Virus record (IMG/VR): IMGVR_UViG_3300033153_013547
Coordinates: 1-64,000 of that record
Direction: 5' to 3' (one strand)
Length of the DNA: 64,000 nucleotides
This document shows, piece after piece, positions 21,404-49,258 of this stretch (positions are counted from its first letter, which is position 1; each line of letters opens with the position of its first letter). The position numbers and the translations under genes are program-made. Below the pieces are notes generated by a model that saw only the letters and a list, made by a program, of their open reading frames with translations, was not told the DNA's origin and made no database searches.

Positions 21404-21984
21404 TATAACCCCTCCATTGGTTTATTCCATAGTATTGCTTGTTCCTTAATCTTCTCATCTAAATAACGAACATTGGACAATTTAGATGAACAATTGTTAG
21501 AAAAGGCATAAAATATTACTTCTTTCCCTAATTGTTTTAGTTTTTTACCTACATAGGCAAAATCACTATCTCCACTAGCTATCATGATTACATCTACATC
21601 ACTGGACATGATCATGGCATCCACAGCTATCTCAACATCAAAATTGCATTTACGTCCTTCTCTTGCTGGTTTAGTTACCGTTTTTACGCCATTATCTCTC
21701 AAAACCTTCAAGAACTTGACATTATCTTTGTGTTTGCCACCATAAGCAATAACATGATTACTGGACACCCACAAACCTTTGATCATAGACTGAATCATAA
21801 GAATGTGATCTATGGCTTTGTATCCCATAGCATTATAGCCACAGTAGAGATTAGAAAGATCAAGTAATAACAAACCTCTCTTTTGTAAGCAATCACCTTT
21901 GTTGTTACAATGATTAACAGATGCTAATTGATGTAAAATCATGCAAACCTCTTTTTCATTGTGGCAACCTTTTACCATGATCAC
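21403..21984 (-). CDS. NYN (LabA/DUF88) PIN-like nuclease
   Basis: LLDLSNL, KCNFDVEIAVDAM, IASGDSDFAY...GKEV. Confidence 0.88.
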   Translation of the reverse strand: MIMVKGCHNEKEVCMILHQLASVNHCNNKGDCLQKRGLLLLDLSNLYCGYNAMGYKAIDHILMIQSMIKGLWVSSNHVIAYGGKHKDNVKFLKVLRDNGVKTVTKPAREGRKCNFDVEIAVDAMIMSSDVDVIMIASGDSDFAYVGKKLKQLGKEVIFYAFSNNCSSKLSNVRYLDEKIKEQAILWNKPMEGL

Positions 21985-22423
21985 TAATCATTATGCCACG
22001 AAGATGATCCATTTCATGCTGAACCACAAAGGCATCACCATCATAAAACCATGTATTTATTTCCTGACCCTCAGAGTTATATCCCTTGATCTTAACTTTA
22101 GTATGTCTATTAACTACATAATACCTGTGTGGTAAAGACAAACAACCTTCAGTATTTTCAATCTCTTTGCCACCAAACTCAATGATTTCAGGATTCAAAA
22201 TACCTAAATATTCTCCATCTTCATCACAAACCATAACAAAAAACATTTCTTCTATCCCAACTTGATTGGCTGCTAACCCCTTACCACCTACTCTATACAT
22301 AGTTTGGATCATAGAAGAAATCAGACTGGCATAGTGTCCTTGCTTAATTTCATCAACAACAATTTCCTTGCACTTGTTTTTCAAACAAGATTTAGGATAT
22401 CTAACGATGTCTAATATTGCCAT
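21956..22423 (-). CDS. def: peptide deformylase
   Basis: GKGLAANQVG, EGCLSLP, QHEMDHLRG. Confidence 0.96.
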   Translation of the reverse strand: MAILDIVRYPKSCLKNKCKEIVVDEIKQGHYASLISSMIQTMYRVGGKGLAANQVGIEEMFFVMVCDEDGEYLGILNPEIIEFGGKEIENTEGCLSLPHRYYVVNRHTKVKIKGYNSEGQEINTWFYDGDAFVVQHEMDHLRGIMISDHGKRLPQ

Positions 22424-22432
22424 ATTGCTCCT

Positions 22433-24094
22433 CTAATAATCAAGATCAACTACTATATCATCCTTCTCTGACTCTAACATTTTCTTTACATGTCGATCAA
22501 TAAGATCTTCACTAAATTTTTCTTTTTCTTCCAGAACATTATACACATGATGTTCTATGCTTTCCTGACCATCTTGGAGAACTGTTTTCAACATATAATA
22601 ACTAACTCTGTTGAGCTGTCCTGGTCTATGAAATCTTGCCAAAAATTGGGACCAACTTCCCATTCTAAAATTAGCACCATAGATCACAACAGTATTACAA
22701 CAAACAAGATTGATACTCTCACCAGCATCTATTTGCATTACCAGAAACTGATTGCCATTAGGATCTTGAAAATCAGATATAACATTTGTTGCTTCTTGTG
22801 CTGTAAGACCACCATATAATTTGTTGCAGTTTAGTTTATCAGCCAATTCTTCCACTGTTTTTCTAAAGTGAGCTGCCACAACAACTTTGTTGCCAGATTC
22901 TTTAGCAGAATCCACAATATCCAGCAGAAATTCTAACTTGGCAGAATCCTCTATGCTTTGTCCAGCAGCAATACCATCACATATTTGCATAAGATCCATA
23001 TTATTTGATGGTTTGTGTTCAGCAGCAAGCACAGCACACTTAGTTACATAAAGATCATTAAGCCTTTTGCTTGCCATACAATCAATAGGAATAAATAATT
23101 GTTCAGGTAAATCCAAGCACTGATCTTTTGTAAATCTGATACCATAATCAAATAATATAGATCTTAGCTCTGGTATGTTTTTGAACCCTACCAGAACTTT
23201 ATGCCTATGAGGTCTATACCTTTGGACCATAACACAATATTTTTGGGTAAATTGCCAATAACTTTTACCTAATATATTTTTGTCAAGAAATGACAACTGA
23301 CCATACAGATCCATATACTTACTTACAACAGGAGTGCCTGTCATAAGCATTTTATATGGAGCCTTTAGTCTTCTGATAGTTTCAGCATAACTTAGCTTCT
23401 TACCTTTGGTTCTAATTTTGTAATTCTTGATATGATGAGCTTCATCTATTATAATCATATCAAAAGTGTCAAATGCACCAAAACCTATACCATCAGCAGG
23501 AACATAACCTGCTGATTCATAGTTAGTAATATAAAACAATGCATCTTTTTTGAAGGCTGCTTGTTTTTGCTGTGGAGAACCAGATGCTATAGAATAACTA
23601 TGAAACCTTTCAGGCAACCACTTCTCAATTTCTTTTACCCAGGTCTCAATCATTGCTTTTTTGGGTGAGAAGATCAATACTTTATGGACAGCACCTTGCT
23701 CTACCCTATATTTTACAATTTCAAGAACAACCCTTGTTTTTGCAGTGCCTTGTTCAGCAAAAATAGCACTCTTGCTTTTTAGCAAGCAAAACTGATACAT
23801 AATATTCTGATGATCAAAAGCAGGAGGATCACCTTCAATCACTGGCTTATTGTGATCTAAGTGATATGTGATTTCAAAAAGATCTTCATCAAGGTAATTT
23901 GCTAATTTTTCTTTTGCCCATTCACATTTAGCAATAGGAAGATACCAATATTTACCAACAGGCTCATATCTGGCTTTTATGGACTTCATAACTGAAATAT
24001 ACTCATCAGCCCAGGGAAAATACATGACACATCTATCTTCATCTGGAACAATTGTAAGTCCAAACCTGTCCTTAGGCAGGGGAATGCTAATCAT
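22433..24094 (-). CDS. SNF2-family helicase with an N-terminal HARP-like domain
   Basis: AEQGTAKT, NYE, IIIDEAH.IKN, MTGTP, ESINL, QFLARFHRPGQ. Confidence 0.9.
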   Translation of the reverse strand: MISIPLPKDRFGLTIVPDEDRCVMYFPWADEYISVMKSIKARYEPVGKYWYLPIAKCEWAKEKLANYLDEDLFEITYHLDHNKPVIEGDPPAFDHQNIMYQFCLLKSKSAIFAEQGTAKTRVVLEIVKYRVEQGAVHKVLIFSPKKAMIETWVKEIEKWLPERFHSYSIASGSPQQKQAAFKKDALFYITNYESAGYVPADGIGFGAFDTFDMIIIDEAHHIKNYKIRTKGKKLSYAETIRRLKAPYKMLMTGTPVVSKYMDLYGQLSFLDKNILGKSYWQFTQKYCVMVQRYRPHRHKVLVGFKNIPELRSILFDYGIRFTKDQCLDLPEQLFIPIDCMASKRLNDLYVTKCAVLAAEHKPSNNMDLMQICDGIAAGQSIEDSAKLEFLLDIVDSAKESGNKVVVAAHFRKTVEELADKLNCNKLYGGLTAQEATNVISDFQDPNGNQFLVMQIDAGESINLVCCNTVVIYGANFRMGSWSQFLARFHRPGQLNRVSYYMLKTVLQDGQESIEHHVYNVLEEKEKFSEDLIDRHVKKMLESEKDDIVVDLDY

Positions 24095-25763
24095 TGATCT
24101 GATTCCTTGCTATAGCAGCCTCTTTATACTTAGGAGGCAATATTTTTGCATATTCTGATAGTGCTTCTAATCCTGTTACATATTTAGACATATACATCAA
24201 GACATCTGGCACATCATATAACGTTGATAGAATCATTATATCTGCTAATCCTAATCTTACACCACTCATCTCTCTAAGATCAGGAGACATAACTCTAGCA
24301 GGACCTGTGGCTGACAAACTATCAACAGCATGATTGTTTTGCCTAGTCATGAACACAAGACCATTGATACAATCAATTTCTTGCCCTTTATGAAATACCT
24401 TAGGACAATCTATTTCAGCAATCTTGCTTATACTATACTCACCAGTAAATTGCCTCACAAATAACCTTTTACCTGGGGCAATTCTATGAGATAGGACAGC
24501 TTCTATGAGCTGTCCATAATTTCTTCTGCCCTTATCTGGACCCTTGTAGATGGAAAATGGGTTGATGATCATGTCAATTCTCCTGCCCAGATCATCCACA
24601 GGCATCCAGTCATCAGGCATGATCTTCACAGTGCCTTTTTGACCACTTCTGTTAGACAATTTATCTCCATCTTCTAACTTGTAAGCAATAAATAGTTCAA
24701 TAGAAACAACCTTATGAATAGAATTCATATATGGTTTTTCTATTTCACTCACTTTATCAACAAATGCAAATGTATTAGCATCATAAAAATGTGCTTTGCA
24801 TTCGTTTTCACTATATGCACCTGCATAGGTGCATAATTGCTGACCATGTTCTACTATTTCTCCAGGTTTTACTAAGGAACTTGTGTTATGCCACATAAGA
24901 GACTTTCTCTTGAAACAACAAAATTTACCAGCAACTGATCTTGATACAACAATAGTGTCTTCAAATGTTTCTGCTATTGAAAAGAATGCTACTCTAACAT
25001 TCAGTCCAGGTGGATCAGGTATATGTCCTGTATCTGCTGTGGTAATTAAGGGTAACTCACTATGAACCAAATCAGTAGCATGTAACATGTTAGAAACAAT
25101 TATTGGTATTCTTCCTAAATTTGTATGTTCTATAAAGGGAATTTTCCTACTAACCTTAGAAAGCCTTCTACTATTAGATGGATCATTATTGTTATCCACC
25201 AAGAAATTAACTAGTCCTATCTTGTCTCCCATACTTGTAGCCAGAGTGTCTAAAATCTTTATAGATTGTATCCCTACTCTAAAATCATAATCTTGTGAAG
25301 GAGCAAGATTCTTTTCAGAATGAACCAAGACTCTATCCTTCATAACTGCTCTGTACAAAGCATTACCATAACCAAGAGGCTCAGTATTGATAGACATGTC
25401 TAGCATTGATTGAAACATGGATGGCCTTATGTCATATCCAAATTTGAGCCTATTCATGTTAAAATCTCCTACAGCTCTTGCCAATCTCATTTCTGCATAT
25501 TGTACTGGATCTACTAATATTCCTCCTATAAAATGAAACATAGGAATTCTAGACACACCATTATGTACTATATGTCCATCATCATACAATCTTGGTATGA
25601 TCAAAGTAACATTTAGTTCTGCATAATTAAATGATGCTAACGCTTTATCTTCTTCTTCCAGAATCTTGATATCAGATGAGCCAACAAAAATTTTGGGCAG
25701 AGAATATGGATTTACCAGGTATCTATGTTTTATACTCATATGCCCCTCCCCTGGTTTTGCCAT
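24087..25763 (-). CDS. RNA polymerase beta-like subunit (highly reduced)
   Basis: IPRLYDDGHIVHNG, IPFIEH, FEDTIVVS, GDKLSNRSGQKGTV, MP...GRRIDMIINP, GVRLG. Confidence 0.9.
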   Translation of the reverse strand: MAKPGEGHMSIKHRYLVNPYSLPKIFVGSSDIKILEEEDKALASFNYAELNVTLIIPRLYDDGHIVHNGVSRIPMFHFIGGILVDPVQYAEMRLARAVGDFNMNRLKFGYDIRPSMFQSMLDMSINTEPLGYGNALYRAVMKDRVLVHSEKNLAPSQDYDFRVGIQSIKILDTLATSMGDKIGLVNFLVDNNNDPSNSRRLSKVSRKIPFIEHTNLGRIPIIVSNMLHATDLVHSELPLITTADTGHIPDPPGLNVRVAFFSIAETFEDTIVVSRSVAGKFCCFKRKSLMWHNTSSLVKPGEIVEHGQQLCTYAGAYSENECKAHFYDANTFAFVDKVSEIEKPYMNSIHKVVSIELFIAYKLEDGDKLSNRSGQKGTVKIMPDDWMPVDDLGRRIDMIINPFSIYKGPDKGRRNYGQLIEAVLSHRIAPGKRLFVRQFTGEYSISKIAEIDCPKVFHKGQEIDCINGLVFMTRQNNHAVDSLSATGPARVMSPDLREMSGVRLGLADIMILSTLYDVPDVLMYMSKYVTGLEALSEYAKILPPKYKEAAIARNQIND

Positions 25764-27390
25764 TTTCTGCCAAAAATTCTTCTGTTAGGCATCTGCAGAA
25801 AACATTTTTTCCATTGATTGATACAGGCCATGCATTATAATCACATCCTACACATAGATCAGGCATCCATGCTTTTCCAAAGCATGGTGGGACATCTTCA
25901 GACAATTCAGGGAAAAATGCAAACTCAGGATCAATTACTCTGGCAAATTCAAGTGTTTCTGGACAACATCCTGAGTTATTGATCATAACGAGTGTGAAAA
26001 AGAGACCAAGTGCTGATGCAGGATTAGTTGAAGCATACAAATCATAGATTTCCTCAGGATTTCCTCCTGCCATGCAGAAAGGACGTATAGTTCCCACACC
26101 ATCCTTTACATCTTTCTGTCTAGCTGTTAATATTAAATCACAGAATGTACTAACTTCTTTTCTTGTAAGACTATCAGAAAATGCTTGCATTAGCAAATTT
26201 ATTGTCTCATCTTTGGTGTCTGCACACAATTTACGTACAGCAGAACAAATATTGAATATGTTTATTAATCTGCCATGCTTGCTGTGTAAATTAGTCTGTG
26301 AAATAGTTTCACAGACTTTTGCAACTTGACTTGCTCTTGTATCATTTATTTCAAGCAAATTCATGGTGTCTAGCCACAATTGTCCTGCTGATCCCATACC
26401 TATCTTCAATTGTATATTGGCAGACTGAACTGATGTTCTTTCTGCATAGAATTTTTCAATATTCAAAACCCCATCTTTATACAAAGAATCCTGTATATCT
26501 GATAGTTTTAGTGATCTACCATGAAAACTATCTGCCATTTCTATAAACTGATCCTTCATAGACTTATCTACGGGAGGATTTACCTCAGAAAACTCATTGA
26601 TATACAATACATGGGTATCCAAATAGTTTTCGTATAGCAATTCTTCTTTTGTACGTTTATGAAGGTTCTGTGGTAGACGAATTATACATAATCCATCACC
26701 ATCAAAATCACAAGCCAAGCCATTATTAATTGCAGGATGGATCTTAATACATCTTCCTTCCACTGGAATCATCCTGCAACCTATGATGCTGTCCCTATGC
26801 AAGACTGGATTCCTCAATAGGAGACCTATATCCCCCTCTTTAGCATCAATCTTTTTCATCAGTCCTATAGGAACACCAACTTCAGATTTCTCAGGATCAA
26901 GATCTAATGAAGTGGCAGCTATAGCTCTTCCACTAAATGGCATTCTTAGCCCCATAATATATCTGGCAAATATACCAGATTTTCCTACAATTGCTTCTGT
27001 TAATTTCTTTTGTAATCTAGTAACTGCTCTTTGCATAGAGTCACTGGTAAAATTCTTGTAAACAATAAGTTTTACAATCCCATCATAAGCTGCTGTCACA
27101 CCATTTATTATGTAATACAATCCTGTAATATCCACTGTACTTGGTCTAAGGTGTATAGGTATGACATATATTCTATCTACCACTGATCCAAAAAATCTGC
27201 AGAATATTTGATGATCATCACTATCCTTAGGCAACATAATATAACGACCCTTAGTAAATAAATCCGGGTCCATTACTGTACCAGTCGGATCGTACTCATG
27301 AAATGGAACAATAGATGAATAACCGCCAACTAATTCACGCATTATTACCTTCTTTACCAAAAATAACATGAAGATATTCACATGGCACAA
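25723..27390 (-). CDS. RNA polymerase beta'-like subunit (highly reduced); start probably ATG 27342
   Basis: VIPIHLRP, GKSGIFA..IMGLRMPFSGRAI, LLRNPVLHR.SI, catalytic ACDFDGD, trigger-loop-like ETISQTNLHSKHG. Confidence 0.92.
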   Translation of the reverse strand: MCHVNIFMLFLVKKVIMRELVGGYSSIVPFHEYDPTGTVMDPDLFTKGRYIMLPKDSDDHQIFCRFFGSVVDRIYVIPIHLRPSTVDITGLYYIINGVTAAYDGIVKLIVYKNFTSDSMQRAVTRLQKKLTEAIVGKSGIFARYIMGLRMPFSGRAIAATSLDLDPEKSEVGVPIGLMKKIDAKEGDIGLLLRNPVLHRDSIIGCRMIPVEGRCIKIHPAINNGLACDFDGDGLCIIRLPQNLHKRTKEELLYENYLDTHVLYINEFSEVNPPVDKSMKDQFIEMADSFHGRSLKLSDIQDSLYKDGVLNIEKFYAERTSVQSANIQLKIGMGSAGQLWLDTMNLLEINDTRASQVAKVCETISQTNLHSKHGRLINIFNICSAVRKLCADTKDETINLLMQAFSDSLTRKEVSTFCDLILTARQKDVKDGVGTIRPFCMAGGNPEEIYDLYASTNPASALGLFFTLVMINNSGCCPETLEFARVIDPEFAFFPELSEDVPPCFGKAWMPDLCVGCDYNAWPVSINGKNVFCRCLTEEFLAENGKTRGGAYEYKT

Positions 27391-28072
27391 TAATGTTTGT
27401 ATCTTTCATGTTTCGTCTAGTAATATGTTCACCAGCACCAGACAAATCAATTTGATTATGTGTCTTCACAATATAGGCACTCTTATCACCAAGGTGTGCT
27501 GTAGCCTTGATTTCGGGCGTAACCCCCTCATGAACGATCAATCTCTTCATTTCTTTTCTGATAGACTCGTATATCCTCGTCCAGGAGACAAAGCCCGAAT
27601 ACTCAAATTTATTGTTCACCTCAAATACATAAAACCTCTCCTGTCCTGTGTCTAGCCAATAAGCATCCCTATGTAGCCATGTTAGCCTTTCTCCTGTTAA
27701 ATGCCCCCTAGCATTTATAATAGAACCAGTTGGCCATAATTTGCCACTGTTACTAATTACTTGTTGCACAGACAGACCACGAAAACATCCTTGCTCTACA
27801 CGCACAATGAATGATTCTAACTTGTGATCTTGTAATACTACGGGTTGTGGAATAAATGAGAATTTAGGCTTTAATCCTTCAAAATCTCTGTCTAATATAG
27901 CATACTTAAGATATGATGGTAAATAAGCATGCCTAATATGGTTGGCTAATCCACCAGGACTTACAAAAAAAGATATGAGAATATCTGTTAAATCATCCCT
28001 AACATCTGCTATACATGCTGCCTTACCATAACCTTGGTATGCTTTTACTAAAACTTCCATACTTGTCTCCAA
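27335..28072 (-). CDS. hypothetical protein co-transcribed with the RNAP genes (start probably ~28060)
   Basis: ORF whose stop overlaps the beta' start; GGAG RBS. Confidence 0.7.
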   Translation of the reverse strand: METSMEVLVKAYQGYGKAACIADVRDDLTDILISFFVSPGGLANHIRHAYLPSYLKYAILDRDFEGLKPKFSFIPQPVVLQDHKLESFIVRVEQGCFRGLSVQQVISNSGKLWPTGSIINARGHLTGERLTWLHRDAYWLDTGQERFYVFEVNNKFEYSGFVSWTRIYESIRKEMKRLIVHEGVTPEIKATAHLGDKSAYIVKTHNQIDLSGAGEHITRRNMKDTNIIVPCEYLHVIFGKEGNNA

Positions 28073-28086
28073 TGGTTATGCAATAA

Positions 28087-28133
28087 AATAGCTCTGATCA
28101 TACCATTTACACAATGGTACAATCAGAGCTATT
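28087..28133 (-). terminator. strong hairpin / intrinsic terminator
   Basis: aatagctctgat...atcagagctatt (12 bp) enclosing taccatt/aatggta, between two genes; U-rich 3' side on the minus strand. Confidence 0.65.
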
Positions 28134-29839: not shown

Positions 29840-30547
29840 CTAATCATTAGTATCAATATCAGTAATATTGTGTTCAACATTATTTATTGACCTCCTAGTC
29901 ATGTTATGCATAAGTCTATCTAAACCAATGGATACTTCAAATAATATACCATGTTTCCAATCATGTCTAATACTACAACTTGCTATTTCTATTCCATCAA
30001 TTTCCCAGTCTATAGTTTTACTACTATAATGAGGAATATTATCCAAAATTACTGAAGAACCACCAAATCTACTACATAGTTGATCAAGAGCAAGGTTGAG
30101 ATAATCTGTCATAGTACCATCAGCAGTAAATAATTGATATTCTTGCTGCCAAAACTCAAGCAAACGTAATTTACTTGCTTTCATGCCTCCATGTGTTTCT
30201 TGTCTAAATGATTTTCCTACTTGCCACACACAGAAAGGTAATACTTTTTTCAACTGAGCTTCCTGAGGAAACATATCATGCAGGACATCTATAGATCCAC
30301 TTGTAGTTTCTGGCCTTAGAGCAAAATCTTTGGTTTTGTGTGGAAACAATCCTGAAGCCATATGACCTGCCCACATGTCTTGAGGAGTAAGAATAGGAGT
30401 TTCTACTCGTAAATATCTGATAGCAGGATTTAGTGACCATGCCTTGATAATTTGTTGATGACAAATTTGAATAAGTGTTTCCCTTTCAACTATCTCATTT
30501 TCTGTCCAATACACTAATGCTTTGTTGTAAATACTTTTCAAGATCAT
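29840..30547 (-). CDS. glycyl-tRNA synthetase (homodimeric class II type) catalytic core only
   Basis: ETPILTP..W.GH, LRPETT, LPF...QVGKSFRQE (motif 2), RLLEFWQ.EYQ.F, HYS..T.D, EIAS..R.D, EVSIGLDRL (motif 3); only 235 aa. Confidence 0.88.
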   Translation of the reverse strand: MILKSIYNKALVYWTENEIVERETLIQICHQQIIKAWSLNPAIRYLRVETPILTPQDMWAGHMASGLFPHKTKDFALRPETTSGSIDVLHDMFPQEAQLKKVLPFCVWQVGKSFRQETHGGMKASKLRLLEFWQQEYQLFTADGTMTDYLNLALDQLCSRFGGSSVILDNIPHYSSKTIDWEIDGIEIASCSIRHDWKHGILFEVSIGLDRLMHNMTRRSINNVEHNITDIDTND

Positions 30548-30910: not shown

Positions 30911-31285
30911 TCAATTTTCGTGCGAATTCAAAACTTGGCAGGCATGTCGCCCAAAGTCCTTTATAATGTTTACTATTTCTCTAGCTTCACTCAAGCAATA
31001 AGAAGTAAGGCTATCTAAGGGTAGGTGTCCTCCATAGAATTTGCCTCTTGTTGCAATATCTTTCCAATAACCTGAATAAGACAGGCATTGGAAAATAATT
31101 TGCACCAAGGTCTCAGGTCCATCATAATCTTGATAGGTAACAACAACAATCAGTGCCATCCTTTCAGCAGCAAAAATTGTAGACTGATATTCATTGTCAC
31201 CTGTTTTTTCCCACTCCAATTGATTAGACTTCTTCACCATAAAAGACTTTCCTTCTGTCTTTCTCTTCTTGAAACTCAAGAACAA
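30911..31285 (-). CDS. hypothetical protein, paralog of 30572..30901
   Basis: As above; start probably ~31240. Confidence 0.65.
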   Translation of the reverse strand: MFLSFKKRKTEGKSFMVKKSNQLEWEKTGDNEYQSTIFAAERMALIVVVTYQDYDGPETLVQIIFQCLSYSGYWKDIATRGKFYGGHLPLDSLTSYCLSEAREIVNIIKDFGRHACQVLNSHEN

Positions 31286-32372
31286 TATCTATAAGATCAT
31301 TGGTCTCAATTAGACCTATGACATGTTTAATTTTACATGCTCTTATCCATTCATAAGCAGATGATATTTGTTCCTTACGCAAACAAAACAAAGCACCAGA
31401 ATAGGGGTAATTCATTGCCTCAAAAGCAAATTCCTTATCTTCTTTTATCATTTCAATAGAATGATAAGTTTCTTCTATATCTGCTACTAAATCTGCTATT
31501 CTTTGTCTTACAAGATCAAAGGCTACTGCCAATCCAGGAAAAAACAAGGCAAGATCATCACTATTTCCCTTGATCACTAAATCTATGATATCTTTTAAGG
31601 ACAAATTGTTCTTAATCCTTGTACCTCTTATGTAGCTTAGTGTTTTGAATTTCAGCCTGTTGAAGTTTTTATCTACAGCAACAAATCCTTCTGCCTGAGT
31701 TCCCATGATATTTTCACAGGCTGTTATTACACCTTCAGTAGTTCTAATATTCTTGTGTAATTTGACACATTCCCAACCAAATGTATTGGCAGCAGTATCA
31801 GGTAATTGTTCTAAATAAGGGTAGCCATGAGACATTTTTCTCACCCCATGAAGAACTATACGTGATCCTTTGTGCCTTACAAGCACTATATTAGCTGGAG
31901 TCATCAATTCAAACATGTAAGTAAATCCAGGCACAGGTAGTTTGTAACCAAGAGTTTTCCATGTTTCCCAGAACAATTCTTCAAAAGTTATTTCCCAACC
32001 TAAAACTCTTCCTCGTGCATCAGCCATACCTAAAGTGCTAACATTCCATTGATCATTGTAATACCACAAGCAAACCATTGATCCATCTACTTTTTCATAG
32101 ATGGAAACATTATTCCAGTCTAGTGCAACAGCATTAGGTTCCCCATAATTGAAGAATTTTCTGTAAGGAAAACAAACAGGCAACCAATCATTGTCTGCAT
32201 CTAACACTATACCTCTGGCATCTTGAACTACAGGATTTTCCATTGGGGAGTGAAGCGTATGATATTTAAACAAATACAGATTAGGAAATATAGAGTGTAT
32301 ATTATGCATTATTCCTAACTCATCAAGTTTATCTAAACCATGATGTCTAATAAAATTGACTATTTCTATCAT
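31224..32372 (-). CDS. T4 Rnl1-like RNA ligase
   Basis: ARGIVLD, PYRKFFNYGE, EKVDGS, TYMFEL, EGFV, RLKFK. Confidence 0.92.
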   Translation of the reverse strand: MIEIVNFIRHHGLDKLDELGIMHNIHSIFPNLYLFKYHTLHSPMENPVVQDARGIVLDADNDWLPVCFPYRKFFNYGEPNAVALDWNNVSIYEKVDGSMVCLWYYNDQWNVSTLGMADARGRVLGWEITFEELFWETWKTLGYKLPVPGFTYMFELMTPANIVLVRHKGSRIVLHGVRKMSHGYPYLEQLPDTAANTFGWECVKLHKNIRTTEGVITACENIMGTQAEGFVAVDKNFNRLKFKTLSYIRGTRIKNNLSLKDIIDLVIKGNSDDLALFFPGLAVAFDLVRQRIADLVADIEETYHSIEMIKEDKEFAFEAMNYPYSGALFCLRKEQISSAYEWIRACKIKHVIGLIETNDLIDIVLEFQEEKDRRKVFYGEEV

Positions 32373-36346: not shown

Positions 36347-36773
36347 TCCTCATTTTCTCACCTATTCTTTTGCCTATCTCAAGAGCTTCATCTGCCGTGG
36401 GAAATACTCTGCCGAAAATTGGATGGATAGCACCAAATAACTTCTGCATCTTTATTCTTGTATCATTATCATAATACCCAGCATAATAACCAATATTTAA
36501 CAATTCATTTTTCGTGGCTTCTTCTACGGAAATTGAATGTATTGTCACAGCATAATTGACCAAGAGATCAAAATACTTTTTTGCTTGTTCTTCTGTCTCA
36601 ACAAAAGAACAAGCAGGATCATATACCTGTCCTATAGTCAAAGTGGCTTTTTGTTCTGTTGCAAGTTCAACAAGTTGGCAAGCTTCACTAAAGTTTTTTG
36701 CTTTTTCAGATAATGTCATAGCAACTTCCTTATCATCCAAGTAAAAAATAGGTAAGCCTCTAGTCAGAATCAA
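36339..36773 (-). CDS. hypothetical phage protein (start probably ~36719)
   Basis: NIGYYAGYY...HPIFG. Confidence 0.65.
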   Translation of the reverse strand: MILTRGLPIFYLDDKEVAMTLSEKAKNFSEACQLVELATEQKATLTIGQVYDPACSFVETEEQAKKYFDLLVNYAVTIHSISVEEATKNELLNIGYYAGYYDNDTRIKMQKLFGAIHPIFGRVFPTADEALEIGKRIGEKMRND

Positions 36774-37016
36774 ACTGACGACGGTAGTTTACAAGACTAC
36801 TGCTTTATCAACTAAGCTATAGAGGCATAAAAGCAAAGTTATTATATTCCTATTGGCAAAAAGACATGATCAACTTCTATTTCGGACACCTCATGTCCGA
36901 ATTATTCAATTCATCTTTTATAGTCCAAGTTGCTTTCTTAGCAAGTTCTGCAGTTCTCTTATACCTTAGCAGCCAGCATGGCTTTATATTTACAAGACAT
37001 AAGATCATGTACAAGA

Positions 37017-46123: not shown

Positions 46124-48070
46124 TTACTCCCTAGAAAGTAGTAGCTTGACAAAAGTGTCTCTTTCTATGTTCTCAAGTGATAGATCTATATCTGCATCAT
46201 CTGGGCTATCCAGCAAAATTGCACCTGCCTTGACAAACAAATCATTAAATGTTATAGCATTCATGCGAGAATACATCAAATACTGCCTGACATGTTCAAT
46301 TATTGCAGTATGGCGCATAGAAATTCCATTACCAACATGTATTCCACCAAGGTAAATGGCTAGATCATTGCTTCTAGTTGTCAGCAATCCAACCACCTGT
46401 TGTTTTTCTACAACTAGTGGAATGCTTGCTACTACTAAATTTGGATCCACTATGTGATCTAGCAAACATGCTTTGTTTTCTTCATTATTATTTCCAGCAG
46501 TCATTGAATTACTTCTAGCAATAATCAAGTTGAAGGGAACATTAGATATTCTTCTGGTATAATCATTGACATTTACTAGGTAGTCTTTCATAACTCCCAA
46601 ACTTATTCTAATTACTTCTGTTGCACCATCAGGTGGTGGTGCATCTATCACATCTCCTGAAAATAGAATGTCTGAACCTGAGCTTCTGTAATCACCATCC
46701 CATCCTATTTTCTGACCCAATGATGTTATAGATAGATCAAGATCTATTCTTGTATCTGATGAATTCTTCCAATGAATACCAATCAGCATATCCATTGGCA
46801 CAGCAATAGAAGTGCCAAATGGAAATCCATGTAAAAATTGTTTCTCAGATGCTGGAACACCATAACAAACAAAATCAGGTATGTAAATTTTCTTGTTTGC
46901 AACAGCAGGTGCAATACTGGAAGCTATTTCATTTACTACCATATCTAAAACGGATTGTGCTTTTTGCCGTTGTTCGTAACTAAACGGCTTGATCTCTGTA
47001 GCAAATCCTTTTCCATTACGAATACGATATAATATTGAATAACTATTTGACATTCTATATTGCAGTGCATGCATCAATCGTATTTGACGGAAGACATTTA
47101 CTCTCTTCAACTCTGCACGTATCTTATCTTCCTGTAAATCAATGCCCATTGTAATATACTTAGTTATAGAATTGAGATAATCTTCTTGCATAGGCTTGTG
47201 ATGTTTCTTAGCCATTCTCCTGATGTAATTGACCATAGAACGACAATCATCATGAAGTTTTCTTATTGCCAGAAAGATTGGCTTAAATCTATAGAAAATT
47301 TCTCCCAGCCTATGCAAACCATAGGTTTCATCATATTTTTTCAAAAGCCTAGCAATAGACTTTCCTTTTTGTGAGCAACGAATCTCTGTGATCATATCTT
47401 TGCTCTTAATAAGCAAGGTTTTACCTGTAAGTTTATACACAAGAAGTCTAAGAAATTCCACTGGATCATGAGGCAACAACCCAATTTTATCACAGAAAAT
47501 AGCCATAGCCTCTTTATTTCTTATAGACTCTATATCTTCTGAGGTTACATTCACCACATCAGCTATAGTGATTATGTCTTCTAATGTGTTTTCCTTAAGT
47601 GCAATACCTGAAGAAAGAAGAGTAAGAATTTTAGACTTGAGTTCATCAATAGTATATCCATGAATAATTGTTATGCTCAATTTATCAGTTATTTCAGGAA
47701 TATCTAGTGCTTCACTTGGAATGTATATGCAATCTGAGTTGTATGCTTCAGAATGTTCTGATTCATATACAGAAATATAATGAAGGATTTGTTCAACCAC
47801 AAGTCGTTCAGCAGAAGCAGTAACCACTTTGTTCCATGATTTATGAAAAGTGGAGTTTAGTTGCTGTGGAGATACTGCAAGTTCAGTAGCTATGCTTGTT
47901 ATGATTTCTTCTATAGCAGAATCTGTATAATGATCTATAACCTCAGAGGACAAAATAAATCCAAGAGGGATTGTTTTAGACAGAAATTTATCTGAACATT
48001 TACGTTTAGGTTTGTCACCTATAGGTAATCCATGAAATAGGCGCAATGTAGCATTTATTATAGCAATCAT
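46124..48070 (-). CDS. 648-aa protein: long helical N-terminal region plus C-terminal TerD-like domain
   Basis: GGAGG RBS at 48076-48080; GIHW...RIDLDLS, IGWDG.YR, FSGDVIDAP...GATE are TerD-like. The ORF-track start at 48202 lies inside the RNA repeats. Confidence 0.75.
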   Translation of the reverse strand: MIAIINATLRLFHGLPIGDKPKRKCSDKFLSKTIPLGFILSSEVIDHYTDSAIEEIITSIATELAVSPQQLNSTFHKSWNKVVTASAERLVVEQILHYISVYESEHSEAYNSDCIYIPSEALDIPEITDKLSITIIHGYTIDELKSKILTLLSSGIALKENTLEDIITIADVVNVTSEDIESIRNKEAMAIFCDKIGLLPHDPVEFLRLLVYKLTGKTLLIKSKDMITEIRCSQKGKSIARLLKKYDETYGLHRLGEIFYRFKPIFLAIRKLHDDCRSMVNYIRRMAKKHHKPMQEDYLNSITKYITMGIDLQEDKIRAELKRVNVFRQIRLMHALQYRMSNSYSILYRIRNGKGFATEIKPFSYEQRQKAQSVLDMVVNEIASSIAPAVANKKIYIPDFVCYGVPASEKQFLHGFPFGTSIAVPMDMLIGIHWKNSSDTRIDLDLSITSLGQKIGWDGDYRSSGSDILFSGDVIDAPPPDGATEVIRISLGVMKDYLVNVNDYTRRISNVPFNLIIARSNSMTAGNNNEENKACLLDHIVDPNLVVASIPLVVEKQQVVGLLTTRSNDLAIYLGGIHVGNGISMRHTAIIEHVRQYLMYSRMNAITFNDLFVKAGAILLDSPDDADIDLSLENIERDTFVKLLLSRE

Positions 48071-48090
48071 TTGTACCTCCATACAAGAAT

Positions 48091-48308
48091 GTTCTGGTGG
48101 CGAGAAGTAAGACTTAATACTACGATTAAATAGGAACTTCTTATGCCACCAGAACTGGTTGCATAAGTAAAAATACCTAGCGGCGGAGAGTAAGTTATCC
48201 ATTTTATAGGAACTATCTATGCCGCTAGGATCAATACATGATAGCGAGAAGTAAAGCTAAGCGCCATGTTGCCATGGCAGTATAAATAGGAACTTCTTAT
48301 GCTATCAT
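48091..48308 (-). ncRNA. three tandem structured RNA-like elements (48091-48155, 48176-48229, 48238-48308)
   Basis: Each has a different perfect closing stem, a conserved GC-AUA-(AGAAGU/GAUAGU)-UCCUAU ... UUACU(U)CUC(C)-GC core and a variable interior. Confidence 0.75.
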
Positions 48309-49113: not shown

Positions 49114-49139
49114 TGTTACTATCCTTTAGAAAACAAAAA

Positions 49140-49221
49140 TGCCCGAGGTAGGATTCAAACCTACACGCCCGAAAGCCTAGCATTTTAAGTGCTATATGTC
49201 TATCTATTCCATCACTCGGGC
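49140..49221 (-). tRNA. tRNA-Leu(TAA), with non-canonical D and T loops, no encoded CCA
   Basis: GCCCGAG acceptor stem, TAGCA-CTTAAAA-TGCTA anticodon arm, long variable arm, GTAGG-TTTGAAT-CCTAC T arm, discriminator A. Confidence 0.88.
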
Positions 49222-49258
49222 ATGTTATTATGTCTTTACTAACAGAAGAATATCTCTT

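What the first reader, a model, noticed from the sequence alone, without database searches (positions are those of the whole stretch)
24087..28072. Miniaturised two-subunit RNA polymerase (~560 + ~540 aa) with an ACDFDGD active site
Seen: each subunit holds both N- and C-terminal conserved motifs in one short chain. Beta runs from IPRLYDDGHIVHNG to GDKLSNRSGQKG and GVRLG. Beta' runs from VIPIHLRP through DFDGD to a bridge-helix-like LKIGMGSAGQL and a trigger-loop-like SQTNLHSKHG. They therefore look internally deleted rather than split as in phiKZ-type enzymes, at under half the size of cellular beta and beta'. NADFDGD is changed to ACDFDGD, the N-terminal beta' zinc ribbon appears absent, and a new Cys cluster (CFG...C..C...CRC) is at the C-terminus. 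The coupled upstream ORF (27335-28072) and downstream SNF2 helicase are candidate specificity or accessory factors (inference).
Basis: partly seen in the sequence, partly recalled or inferred. Interest (0 to 1): 0.7.

Follow-up and report, generated by a model that had tools for sequence, protein, structure and literature searches.

The report
Half-size two-subunit phage RNA polymerase
A 261-kb phage genome carries two adjacent genes for relatives of the two large subunits of cellular RNA polymerase, each about 40% of normal size yet keeping the catalytic parts; they belong to a widespread, apparently undescribed group of uncultured phage enzymes that could serve as a minimal model of the cell's transcription machine.

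Summary
Window 25723-27342 (-) encodes a 539-aa beta'-like protein. Window 24087-25763 (-) encodes a 558-aa beta-like protein.

AlphaFold models built on family alignments align along the whole span of Rpb1 (Z 18.9) and Rpb2 (Z 25.9). The chains are therefore internally shortened full-span subunits, not phiKZ-type halves. The rest of the complete genome gave no other Pfam RNAP domain, and no sigma, alpha or omega.

The pair is not unique. A full HMMER search found about 60 cluster representatives of 430-620 aa with DxDGD at residues ~200-235. In all 18 contigs I fetched that extend past the beta'-like gene (17 distinct; L003 and L004 are near-identical), a ~550-720-aa beta-like gene follows it.

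A complex prediction supports the heterodimer (score 0.68; best control 0.00).

- ACDFDGD lies within the family's normal variation.
- The C-terminal Cys cluster is lineage-specific and poorly modelled.
- The SNF2 helicase and the upstream ORF have no support as accessory factors beyond overlapping reading frames.

Outside the window, an 1858-aa ORF in the structural block carries NADYDGD, trigger-loop-like and GDK..KG motifs. It may be a virion RNA polymerase.

I found no paper describing this compact family. Activity is untested.

The parts
25723..27342 (-). beta'-like subunit gene, 539 aa (P0001). It holds the switch-2-like GKSGIFARYIMGLRMPFSGRA (120-140), a double-psi barrel with RNPVLHRDS (177-185) and ACDFDGD (210-216), a bridge helix (295-329), trigger helices (336-370, His356), and a poorly modelled tail (425-539).
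   Evidence: Pfam Rpb1_2 E 4.6e-8. Family alignment A1 has invariant R133, R177, P179, D212, D214, G215 and D216. AF2 model pLDDT is 72 overall and high over residues 1-420. Foldseek matches beta'/gamma at E 4e-10. VIA-align gives Z 18.9 to Rpb1. Atlas TMq is 0.63 to an 888-aa viral Rpb1-like protein.
26695..26715 (-). ACDFDGD metal-binding motif of beta' (residues 210-216)
   Evidence: D212, D214 and D216 are invariant in 59 family sequences.
26356..26460 (-). Predicted bridge helix of beta' (residues 295-329, includes LKIGMGSAGQL)
   Evidence: A 35-residue helix at pLDDT ~80-89. K313, G317 and G320 are at least 90% conserved. Residues 295-318 are in the predicted interface with beta.
26233..26337 (-). 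Predicted trigger helices and loop of beta' (residues 336-370, CETISQTNLHSKHG)
   Evidence: Helices 336-356 and 362-370 at pLDDT ~76-92. E345, Q349 and K355 are at least 90% conserved, with His at Q+7 as in the bacterial GEPGTQLTMRTFH (the bacterial motif is from my own knowledge).
25789..25884 (-). Lineage-specific Cys cluster in the beta' tail (C487, C497, C500, C516, C518)
   Evidence: Present in the sequence. Not conserved in the family. pLDDT 33-52. Zinc binding is only a guess.
24087..25763 (-). beta-like subunit gene, 558 aa (P0003; alternative start at 25739). Motifs: IPRLYDDGHIVHNG (56-69), LDTLATSMGDKIGLVNFL (171-188), IPFIEHTNLGRIP (208-220), TFEDT (266-270), GDKLSNRSGQKG (366-377), GVRLG (501-505).
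   Evidence: Pfam Rpb2_6 E 1.9e-14. Alignment A4 has invariant P57, D172, R218, D269, G366, K368, K376 and P388. AF2 pLDDT 70. Foldseek matches bacterial beta at E 2e-22. VIA-align gives Z 25.9 to Rpb2. The family profile matches E. coli beta 1031-1300 at E 5.5e-31. Atlas TMq is 0.67 to a 989-aa phage beta.
24633..24668 (-). GDKLSNRSGQKG, the two-lysine motif of the beta barrel (K368, K376)
   Evidence: In the predicted complex, G366, K368 and K376 touch beta' residues 141-143 and 197-198, beside the Asp triad.
27335..28060 (-). Upstream ORF of 241 aa (the TTG-extended reading reaches 28072). Its stop overlaps the beta' start by 8 nt. Function unknown.
   Evidence: No Pfam or PHROG hit. Atlas gave nothing usable. 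No similarity to ORFs of related loci or to the conserved small upstream ORF family A5.
22433..24094 (-). SNF2-family helicase of 553 aa. Its start overlaps the beta stop by 8 nt.
   Evidence: Pfam SNF2-rel_dom 3e-21 and Helicase_C 9e-16. PHROG_62 2e-89. Relatives occur in 1443 phage records.
28089..28131 (-). Long hairpin (~20-bp stem, 5-nt loop) followed by ATTTTATT, lying between the preceding gene's stop (28150) and the cluster. It is terminator-like.
   Evidence: It is not part of a repeated family in the genome.

Best explanation
The two genes encode the catalytic core of a phage-made, DNA-dependent RNA polymerase of the two-barrel (multisubunit) type, reduced to about 125 kDa in two chains.

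Shown by computation: each chain keeps the universally conserved core of its cellular counterpart.
- beta' keeps switch 2, the Asp-triad barrel, the bridge helix and the trigger loop.
- beta keeps the N-terminal protrusion base, the fork/ETPEG-like segment, the FED segment, the two-lysine barrel and the C-terminal GxRxG segment.
- The peripheral domains are lost: the beta' N-terminal zinc ribbon and clamp head, the funnel and jaw, most of the beta lobes and external domains, and a shortened flap.
- The two barrels are predicted to face each other and form one active site.

Inferred: the enzyme works without alpha, omega or sigma homologues, as phiKZ and AR9 polymerases do. It transcribes part of the phage genome (most likely middle or late genes) independently of the host enzyme. 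Promoter specificity would come from an unidentified phage factor or from the core itself.

It is a very divergent member (at most 27% identity) of a family of such gene pairs that is common in uncultured large phages.
For: - Homology is above Pfam's curated thresholds for both barrels. PHROG families of phage RNAP beta subunits also match.
- Family profiles match bacterial beta' at E 8e-36 and bacterial beta at E 7e-32 among solved structures.
- The catalytic residues are invariant across the family: beta' D212, D214, D216, R133, R177 and P179; beta K368, K376, D269 and R218.
- Structure models align over the whole span of Rpb1 and Rpb2, with about 400 and 450 residues aligned.
- They also align to 888- and 989-aa viral subunits that carry Rpb1_5 and Rpb2_7 domains.
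- The bridge helix and trigger helices are modelled with high confidence and carry the most conserved post-barrel columns.
- The complex prediction scored 0.68 against a best control of 0.00. That mark was reached by 58 of 80 solved complexes and 2 of 110 mismatched pairs. The runs agree in at least 65% of contacts and the partner's pLDDT is at least 70. The interface joins the Asp-triad region to the beta GDK/KG residues.
- The beta'-then-beta gene pair is conserved in all 18 fetched loci that extend past the beta'-like gene (17 distinct contigs).
- The complete genome (direct terminal repeats, 100% by CheckV) has one hit each for PF00562 and PF00623. It has none for Rpb1_1, Rpb1_5, Rpb2_3, Rpb2_7, Sigma70_r2 or RNA_pol_L, and only a sub-threshold Rpb6 hit inside a structural ORF.
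Against: - No activity or expression data exist. No sequencing run holding the locus was listed.
- The models rest on thin alignments: 59 and 18 sequences, at most 27-28% identical to the window's proteins.
- About 115 C-terminal residues of beta' and about 75 of beta are poorly modelled.
- Profile-profile alignment to bacterial beta' is confident only for residues ~111-222. The bridge-helix and trigger-loop assignment therefore rests on the fold model and on motif resemblance.
- The complex score may partly reflect the predictor's memory of solved RNAP structures.
- Highly diverged extra subunits would escape Pfam.
- No promoter motif was found among intergenic 9-mers.
Confidence: 0.72

Rival explanations
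1. The two chains are only part of a larger enzyme. As in phiKZ/AR9, further phage polypeptides encoded elsewhere and too diverged to recognise, or host alpha/omega/sigma, are obligatory for assembly or initiation.
For: - phiKZ-type enzymes need a fifth, unrelated subunit for promoter use (PMC7598289, PMC7824862).
- The C-terminal tails of both chains are poorly modelled on their own.
- Many relatives have a conserved ~130-aa ORF just upstream of beta'.
- Here a 241-aa ORF overlaps the beta' start by 8 nt.
- Three large proteins in the non-structural blocks have no PHROG family match: 46124-48202, 69556-72315 and 206011-210705.
Against: - The chains already span the N-to-C extent of the cellular subunits, so no 'missing half' is required.
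- No RNAP, sigma, alpha or omega domain occurs elsewhere in the genome.
- The small upstream ORF of relatives has no counterpart in this genome.
- Genes flanking the pair differ from locus to locus.
Confidence: 0.45
2. The pair is a decayed or repurposed remnant, not a working transcriptase. It could be an inactive relic, or a primase-like or RNA-templated polymerase.
For: - It is extremely divergent, at most 27% identical to any relative.
- The N of NADFDGD is lost.
- Other two-barrel enzymes have evolved different template or product use (PolD and eukaryotic RdRPs: PMC7708050, PMC2919709).
Against: - Both reading frames are intact and the genes overlap as translationally coupled genes do.
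- Every catalytic residue invariant in the family is kept.
- The trigger-loop His and the bridge-helix glycines are kept.
- Sequence and fold matches are to DNA-dependent beta/beta' rather than to PolD or RdRP.
- The N/A positions of the motif vary in the whole family.
Confidence: 0.07
3. These are ordinary phiKZ-type split subunits (N-beta' and C-beta) that were misread as complete chains.
For: - The best PHROG hits are to phage RNAP 'beta subunit' families of 478 and 698 positions that look like split subunits.
- An SNF2 helicase next to the beta barrel gene recalls the phiKZ-group neighbourhood (PMC7824862).
Against: - In PHROG_2987 the barrel lies at positions 372-445 of 478, near the C-terminus. 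Here it lies at residues 186-255 of the 555-aa reading and is followed by about 300 residues.
- Those residues include a modelled bridge helix and trigger helices.
- The fold alignments reach Rpb1 residue ~1432 and cover Rpb2 from ~122.
- There is no second set and no other fragments in the genome.
Confidence: 0.05

Closest known systems
phiKZ / AR9 non-virion RNA polymerases of jumbo phages (PMC7598289, PMC7824862, PMC8287921)
   Same: Both are phage-encoded relatives of bacterial beta/beta'. Neither has alpha, omega or sigma homologues. Both occur in genomes over 200 kb. An SNF2-type helicase gene lies beside the beta barrel gene.
   Different: In phiKZ and AR9, beta and beta' are each split into two or more polypeptides of near-cellular total size, and a fifth subunit is needed. 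Those phages carry two paralogous sets. Here each subunit is a single chain of about 550 aa and the genome has only one set. The window's proteins gave no tblastn match in cultured phages.
mReC: metagenomic Caudovirales with unsplit beta and beta' (Weinheimer & Aylward 2020, PMC7481178)
   Same: Both are uncultured tailed phages with separate, unsplit beta and beta' genes that can be aligned with cellular enzymes. The best shape match of the beta model is a 989-aa cluster, mostly from tailed phages (Uroviricota), with Rpb2_3/6/7 domains.
   Different: That study required each subunit to be at least 800 aa with NADxDGD, so the ~550-aa family was excluded by design. The window's chains are roughly half that size. 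They lack Pfam-detectable Rpb1_1/3/4/5 and Rpb2_3/7 domains.
YonO (SPbeta prophage) and its relatives; crAss-like gp66; P23-45 gp64 (PMC5467207, PMC10770324)
   Same: All are small or unusual phage two-barrel RNA polymerases that work without the cellular accessory subunits.
   Different: Those are single chains with homology limited to a few active-site residues, and YonO has no detectable trigger loop (PMC5467207). The window's enzyme has two chains, passes Pfam thresholds for both barrels, and keeps bridge-helix and trigger-loop-like elements.
Yeast killer-plasmid pGKL2 Orf6 Rpb2::Rpb1 fusion (PMC2919709)
   Same: Both are drastically simplified enzymes that keep both barrels, the bridge helix and the protrusion, fork and hybrid-binding parts.
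   Different: Orf6 is one fused chain (beta part first) on a eukaryotic cytoplasmic plasmid, with no detectable trigger, switch 1/5, rudder or lid (PMC2919709). Here there are two chains in the order beta' then beta, from a phage, and the trigger-like element is kept.
Bacterial RNA polymerase core (E. coli, T. thermophilus structures)
   Same: The active-site architecture is the same. The family profiles score best against bacterial and plastid chains.
   Different: The window's chains are about 40% of the bacterial size. They have no zinc ribbon, no alpha2/omega platform and no sigma.

Membership tests
Two-barrel (multisubunit-type) RNA polymerase catalytic core | beta'-type double-psi barrel with a DxDGD Asp triad | tested here: met
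   Pfam Rpb1_2 is above its cut-off. D212, D214 and D216 are invariant in the family. The fold matches beta'/Rpb1.
Two-barrel (multisubunit-type) RNA polymerase catalytic core | beta-type double-psi barrel with two conserved lysines (GDK...KG) | tested here: met
   Pfam Rpb2_6 is above its cut-off. K368 and K376 are invariant. The fold matches beta/Rpb2.
Two-barrel (multisubunit-type) RNA polymerase catalytic core | The two barrels face each other to form one active site | tested here: inconclusive
   The predicted complex passes (0.68 against 0.00). It places beta' 141-143, 197-198 and 211-215 against beta 364-368 and 376-380. This is a prediction only and may draw on memory of solved RNAPs.
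Two-barrel (multisubunit-type) RNA polymerase catalytic core | Bridge helix and trigger loop following the beta' barrel | tested here: inconclusive
   The model has a 35-residue helix and a helical hairpin with conserved K313, G317, G320, E345, Q349 and K355 plus His356. The archaeal A' alignment ends at model residue ~335. The sequence profile alignment is not significant there.
Two-barrel (multisubunit-type) RNA polymerase catalytic core | DNA-templated RNA synthesis | not testable with these tools
   Needs a biochemical assay.
phiKZ/AR9-type split jumbo-phage RNAP | beta and beta' each split into N- and C-terminal polypeptides | tested here: not met
   Single chains span the whole of Rpb1 and Rpb2. 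No other fragments are in the genome.
phiKZ/AR9-type split jumbo-phage RNAP | Two paralogous sets (virion and non-virion) | tested here: not met
   There is one hit each for PF00562 and PF00623. The family profiles find no second copy. The only other candidate is a single giant ORF supported by motifs alone.
phiKZ/AR9-type split jumbo-phage RNAP | No alpha, omega or sigma homologues | tested here: met
   There is no Sigma70_r2 or RNA_pol_L hit. The one Rpb6 hit is below threshold (11.7 bits, E 0.08) and lies inside a 974-aa ORF.
mReC phage RNAP (Weinheimer & Aylward 2020) | Unsplit beta and beta' of at least 800 aa matching COG0085/COG0086, with NADxDGD | tested here: not met
   The subunits are 558 and 539 aa and the motif is ACDFDGD. 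The criteria are quoted from PMC7481178.
Compact beta'/beta gene-pair family of uncultured phages (defined here) | beta'-like protein of ~430-620 aa with DxDGD at residue ~200-235 | tested here: met
   The window's protein is 539 aa with the motif at 212-216. About 60 cluster representatives share this layout.
Compact beta'/beta gene-pair family of uncultured phages (defined here) | A beta-like gene of ~550-720 aa immediately downstream on the same strand | tested here: met
   This holds here, with a 41-nt overlap. It also holds in L003-L007, L009-L011, L013-L016 and L025-L030. In L029 only the 5' end of the downstream gene lies on the contig, so it is unconfirmed there. In L031 one AAA gene lies between the two.
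Compact beta'/beta gene-pair family of uncultured phages (defined here) | One evolutionary lineage (a single clade) | tested here: inconclusive
   On a 144-column barrel tree the compact layout is clustered (10 changes against 46.7 when shuffled). Strict monophyly of my length-based label is rejected (AU p 2e-6). The labels are crude and include gene fragments.

The most novel reading that the evidence does not exclude
The beta'/beta pair is a self-sufficient two-chain RNA polymerase of ~125 kDa. It would be the smallest enzyme known to keep the canonical multisubunit layout, with bridge helix and trigger loop, and it would represent a large unstudied family of phage transcriptases. In this phage it would act as the non-virion enzyme of a two-polymerase programme. 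The injected enzyme would be the 1858-aa single-chain protein encoded in the structural block.
Probability: 0.3. Interest if true: 0.82.

Novelty: new variant of a known kind. Interest (0 to 1): 0.64.

Why it matters
Cellular RNA polymerases are about 400 kDa. How much of that mass is needed for templated, processive, accurate RNA synthesis is an old question. The known minimal relatives (YonO, crAss gp66, killer-plasmid Orf6) have diverged so far that most functional elements cannot be mapped.

A two-chain enzyme of about 1100 residues that still aligns with beta and beta', and appears to keep switch 2, both barrels, the bridge helix and the trigger loop, would be a tractable minimal model. 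It could be used to study the nucleotide-addition cycle, subunit assembly without alpha and omega, and initiation without sigma.

The family's abundance in metagenomes also implies that many uncultured large phages transcribe independently of the host. That bears on phage host-takeover biology and on rifampicin-type inhibition. Such small orthogonal polymerases may also be useful tools.

Tried and rejected
- Cultured phages: blastn and tblastn of the locus and of beta' against 50,697 phage records gave no match. Family member P0009 gave none. P0022 hit only an 1127-aa beta' of Rhizobium phages, which has a different layout.
- Word-indexed protein searches: these found only self plus weak hits. 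The exhaustive HMMER search was needed to find the family.
- The search for related loci: single proteins found nothing in IMG/VR. Alignment A1 was too diverse to use. Sub-alignment A3 gave 2 viral and 16 metagenome loci.
- Upstream ORF: no Pfam, PHROG or Atlas lead. No similarity to ORFs of related loci. hhalign against the conserved small upstream ORF family gave probability 0.3%.
- Small upstream ORF family in relatives: no Pfam family and no homologue in this genome.
- Profile-profile alignment of A1 to bacterial beta': confident only over the switch-2 and barrel region, so bridge-helix and trigger-loop homology could not be shown by sequence.
- The 1858-aa ORF: no Pfam, PHROG, PDB-sequence, phage tblastn or Atlas support. 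hhalign was weak (E 0.01 and 0.08). There was no homologue in two related virus records.
- Promoter search: enrichment of intergenic 9-mers gave only Shine-Dalgarno-like words.
- Hairpins: a genome-wide scan found no family related to the hairpin at 28089-28131.
- Phylogeny: the barrel-region tree did not resolve one clade for the compact layout.
- Sequencing runs: none was listed for the locus, so there is no expression evidence.
- BFVD: no viral predicted structure covered the whole beta' model (best TMq 0.27 among RNAP hits).

Full report
**Setting**

The window is the first 64 kb of a 261,124-bp virus record with direct terminal repeats, judged complete. GC content is about 36%, and nearly all genes in the window lie on the minus strand.

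The genome encodes the replication set of a large phage: a DnaE-like polymerase, a DnaB-like helicase, NAD- and ATP-dependent ligases, an SbcC-like protein and a Lon-like protease. A long plus-strand block at about 103-201 kb holds very large, presumably structural, proteins.

**The observation**

Four minus-strand ORFs overlap one another:
- 27335-28060: 241 aa, starting at an ATG behind GGAG.
- 25723-27342: 539 aa, beta'-like.
- 24087-25763: 558 aa, beta-like. A second possible start at 25739 lies behind GGAGG.
- 22433-24094: 553 aa, SNF2 helicase.

The overlaps are 8 nt, 41 (or 17) nt and 8 nt.

Pfam places the beta-like protein in Rpb2_6 (E 1.9e-14) and the beta'-like protein in Rpb1_2 (E 4.6e-8). 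Both scores are above the curated cut-offs, and no other RNAP domain is detected in either protein.

**Not a singleton**

Word-indexed searches saw only the proteins themselves. An exhaustive HMMER search of 1.84 billion representatives with the beta' protein gave 354 hits at E <= 1e-3.

Among the best 150 hits, about 60 are proteins of 430-620 aa with DxDGD at residues ~200-235, the same layout as here. The residues before the triad vary (GADCDGD, GADFDGD, NADFDGD, ACDHDGD and others), so ACDFDGD is ordinary within this family.

All listed members come from metagenomes and none carries an informative name (the two that are named at all are called 'hypothetical protein').

In all 18 contigs I fetched that extend past the beta'-like gene (17 distinct; L003 and L004 are near-identical), it is followed on the same strand by a ~550-720-aa gene that aligns end to end with the window's beta-like protein. 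On L012, L017 and L029 the contig ends too early to confirm the partner. In L031 one AAA gene lies between the two.

The contigs range from a few kb to 181 kb. They carry phage-type genes such as RNA ligase, RtcB, a Ro60-like protein, Cpn60 and a PolIII-alpha-type polymerase.

The window's pair is the most divergent member seen. It is at most 27% (beta') and 28% (beta) identical to any relative.

**What the chains contain**

In the 59-sequence beta' alignment the conserved columns are as follows:
- Invariant: R133, R177, P179, D212, D214, G215 and D216.
- At least 90% conserved: G120, G123 and V141 in the switch-2-like GKxGxxxRxxxGxRxxxSGRA segment.
- At least 90% conserved after the barrel: K313, G317, G320, E345, Q349 and K355.

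The AlphaFold model has pLDDT 72 overall and is high for residues 1-420. It shows the barrel, a 35-residue helix (295-329) that carries K313, G317 and G320, and a helical hairpin (336-356 and 362-370) that carries E345, Q349 and K355. His356 sits at Q+7, the spacing of the bacterial trigger-loop motif GEPGTQLTMRTFH (that motif is from my own knowledge).

Fold comparisons for the beta' model:
- Foldseek matches bacterial beta' and cyanobacterial gamma at E 4e-10.
- VIA-align gives Z 18.9, with model residues 15-522 aligned across Rpb1 44-1432.
- The alignment to archaeal subunit A', which ends with the bridge helix, stops at model residue ~335.
- A shape search of the ESM Atlas gives TM 0.63 by query over residues 20-519 to an 888-aa viral protein that carries Rpb1_2, Rpb1_3 and Rpb1_5.

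For beta, the invariant columns are P57, D172, R218, D269, G366, K368, K376 and P388. By my reading these correspond to the bacterial segments around ETPEG, the R678 region, E813/D814 and K1065/K1073. The E. coli numbers are from memory.

Fold and profile comparisons for beta:
- The family profile aligns positions 351-554 with E. coli beta 1031-1300 at E 5.5e-31.
- The model (pLDDT 70) gives Foldseek E 2e-22 to bacterial beta.
- VIA-align gives Z 25.9 to Rpb2, with model 43-483 aligned on Rpb2 122-1059.
- The Atlas search gives TM 0.67 by query to a 989-aa phage beta with Rpb2_3, Rpb2_6 and Rpb2_7.

Both chains are therefore shortened along their whole length, not cut in half.

What is missing, by difference:
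- The first ~240 residues of bacterial beta', including the zinc ribbon. The N-terminal 120 residues here hold one Cys.
- Most of the segment between the barrel and the bridge helix.
- Everything that follows the trigger loop in cellular enzymes, apart from a short tail.
- Most of the beta lobes and external domains. Only about 97 residues lie between the FED and GDK motifs, where the flap sits.

**Do they form one enzyme?**

A complex prediction of beta' 1-430 with beta 35-558 scored 0.68 (runs 0.70, 0.68, 0.64), against 0.00 for all three controls. In the tool's calibration that mark was reached by 58 of 80 solved complexes and by 2 of 110 mismatched pairs. The runs share at least 65% of contacts and the partner's pLDDT is at least 70.

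The interface places beta' 137-144, 197-198 and 211-215 against beta 364-368 and 376-380, that is, barrel against barrel. It also packs the otherwise disordered beta tail (482-543) on beta'. Because solved RNAPs resemble this pair, the pass shows likeness to them rather than proof of binding.

**Are the missing parts elsewhere?**

Searches of the whole genome gave:
- One hit each for PF00562 and PF00623.
- None for Rpb1_1, Rpb1_5, Rpb2_3 or Rpb2_7.
- None for Sigma70_r2 or RNA_pol_L, and only an 11.7-bit Rpb6 match inside a 974-aa ORF.
- No second copy when searched with the family profiles.

Very diverged partners cannot be excluded. Three large proteins in the non-structural blocks (692, 919 and 1564 aa) have no PHROG family match.

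**The neighbours**

The SNF2 protein is a member of PHROG_62 (E 2e-89), with relatives in 1443 phage records. The best-listed records are 42-179-kb phages that annotate it simply as a DNA helicase. I did not check those phages for RNAP genes.

The SNF2 gene is not adjacent to the pair in the relatives I fetched. L006 has a different DEAD-type helicase 1.2 kb upstream.

Iyer et al. noted a Rad25-like SNF2 helicase linked to RNAP genes in phiKZ-group phages (PMC7824862). The adjacency here is therefore suggestive, but the only evidence for it is the 8-nt overlap.

The 241-aa upstream ORF has no detectable relative. Many relatives have a conserved ~130-aa ORF in that position. It matches no Pfam family, is unrelated to the 241-aa ORF and is absent from this genome. 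A role as a specificity factor is a guess for either protein.

A ~20-bp hairpin followed by ATTTTATT (28089-28131) separates the cluster from the preceding gene. It looks like a terminator and is not repeated elsewhere in the genome.

**A second polymerase?**

Outside the window, ORF 150756-156332 (1858 aa, plus-strand structural block) contains three RNAP-like motifs:
- INADYDGDT at 405-413.
- FEVMAQIPLEAKHKTGG at 720-736.
- GDKYAMVQWKG at 1315-1325.

Across all ORFs of at least 80 aa in the genome (100,135 aa), three patterns each match only the compact RNAP genes and this ORF. The patterns are [NGA][ACLMG]D.DGD, GDK.{5,9}[KR]G and E...Q.....KH. I chose these patterns after seeing the compact genes.

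The beta' family profile hits this ORF at E 0.0024 among 473 ORFs. hhalign is weak, at E 0.01 and 0.08. Pfam, PHROGs, PDB sequences, cultured phages and the Atlas give nothing.

It is a candidate single-chain virion polymerase with the beta'-like part first. It is not established, and I could not fold it.

**Comparison with what is known**

- Published phage two-barrel enzymes are of three kinds. There are the split phiKZ/AR9 enzymes (PMC7598289, PMC7824862) and the single-chain, barely alignable YonO, gp66 and P23-45 enzymes (PMC5467207, PMC10770324). There is also the mReC group, whose definition required subunits of at least 800 aa (PMC7481178).
- The killer-plasmid Orf6 is a comparably reduced enzyme, but it is fused and lacks a detectable trigger element (PMC2919709).
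- A 2026 review of jumbo phages mentions no compact two-subunit form (PMC13282480).
- Four full-text searches found no description of a ~550 + ~560-aa family. The library is incomplete, so this is absence of evidence only.

**Verdict**

The feature is real. It is best described as a very divergent member of an apparently undescribed family of compact two-subunit phage RNA polymerases. The catalytic core is retained and the periphery is lost.

The side claims (a special ACDFDGD, a Cys-cluster function, and SNF2 or the upstream ORF as accessory factors) are not supported.

Function as an autonomous transcriptase is inferred, not shown.

Noticed in passing
Same genome, outside the window: G000:C1:150756-156332 (+), = L032:10757-16333: An 1858-aa ORF in the structural gene block carries NADYDGD (406-412), a trigger-loop-like EVMAQIPLEAKHKTGG (721-736) and GDKYAMVQWKG (1315-1325). 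In the whole genome these three RNAP patterns co-occur only here and in the compact RNAP genes. It may be a single-chain virion RNA polymerase. It has no database family.
   Followed up: partly
Related loci L006, L007, L009-L017, L029, L030 (for example L006:9610-10020): A conserved ORF of ~125-135 aa lies directly upstream of the beta'-like gene in many relatives (alignment A5). It has no Pfam family and no counterpart in this genome. It is a candidate third subunit or specificity factor of the compact polymerase family.
   Followed up: partly
window 28089-28131 (-): A hairpin with a ~20-bp stem and 5-nt loop, followed by ATTTTATT, lies in the 90-nt gap before the four-gene cluster. A sigma70-like TTGACT-17-TAGAAT lies just upstream (28175-28147). 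It may be a terminator of the preceding unit or a 5'-UTR element. It is not repeated elsewhere in the genome.
   Followed up: partly
window 21956-22423 (-), 29840-30547 (-), 31224-32372 (-): Going by their translations only, the genes around the cluster include a peptide-deformylase-like protein (EGCLS...HEMDH motifs), a ~235-aa protein resembling a class II aminoacyl-tRNA-synthetase core fragment, and an RNA-ligase-like protein. RNA ligase genes also lie near the RNAP pair in relatives (L004, L030).
   Followed up: no
window 36755-36826 (-) and 49139-49222 (-): Two tRNA genes, tRNA-Thr (TGT) and tRNA-Leu (TAA), lie in the window.
   Followed up: no
L032:544-6465 (G000:C1:140543-146464, +): A 1973-aa protein in the structural block has an embedded PD-(D/E)XK / Cas4-like nuclease domain (PHROG_1706 E 8e-13, residues ~1265-1403). 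Two further proteins of 1428 and 2641 aa next to it have no family match.
   Followed up: no
Hits (for example P0032, P0040, P0063, P0083): A set of 1500-1800-aa metagenomic proteins carries AGDFDGD at residues ~1100-1350. This suggests another group of fused or giant RNAP-like proteins. One hit (P0039) has three NADFDGD copies 89 residues apart.
   Followed up: no
L003:11794-13446 and L026:2-703: Ro60/TROVE plus vWA genes lie within a few kb of the compact RNAP pair in two unrelated contigs. RtcB and RNA ligase genes occur in others. RNA-repair genes may travel with this polymerase.
   Followed up: no
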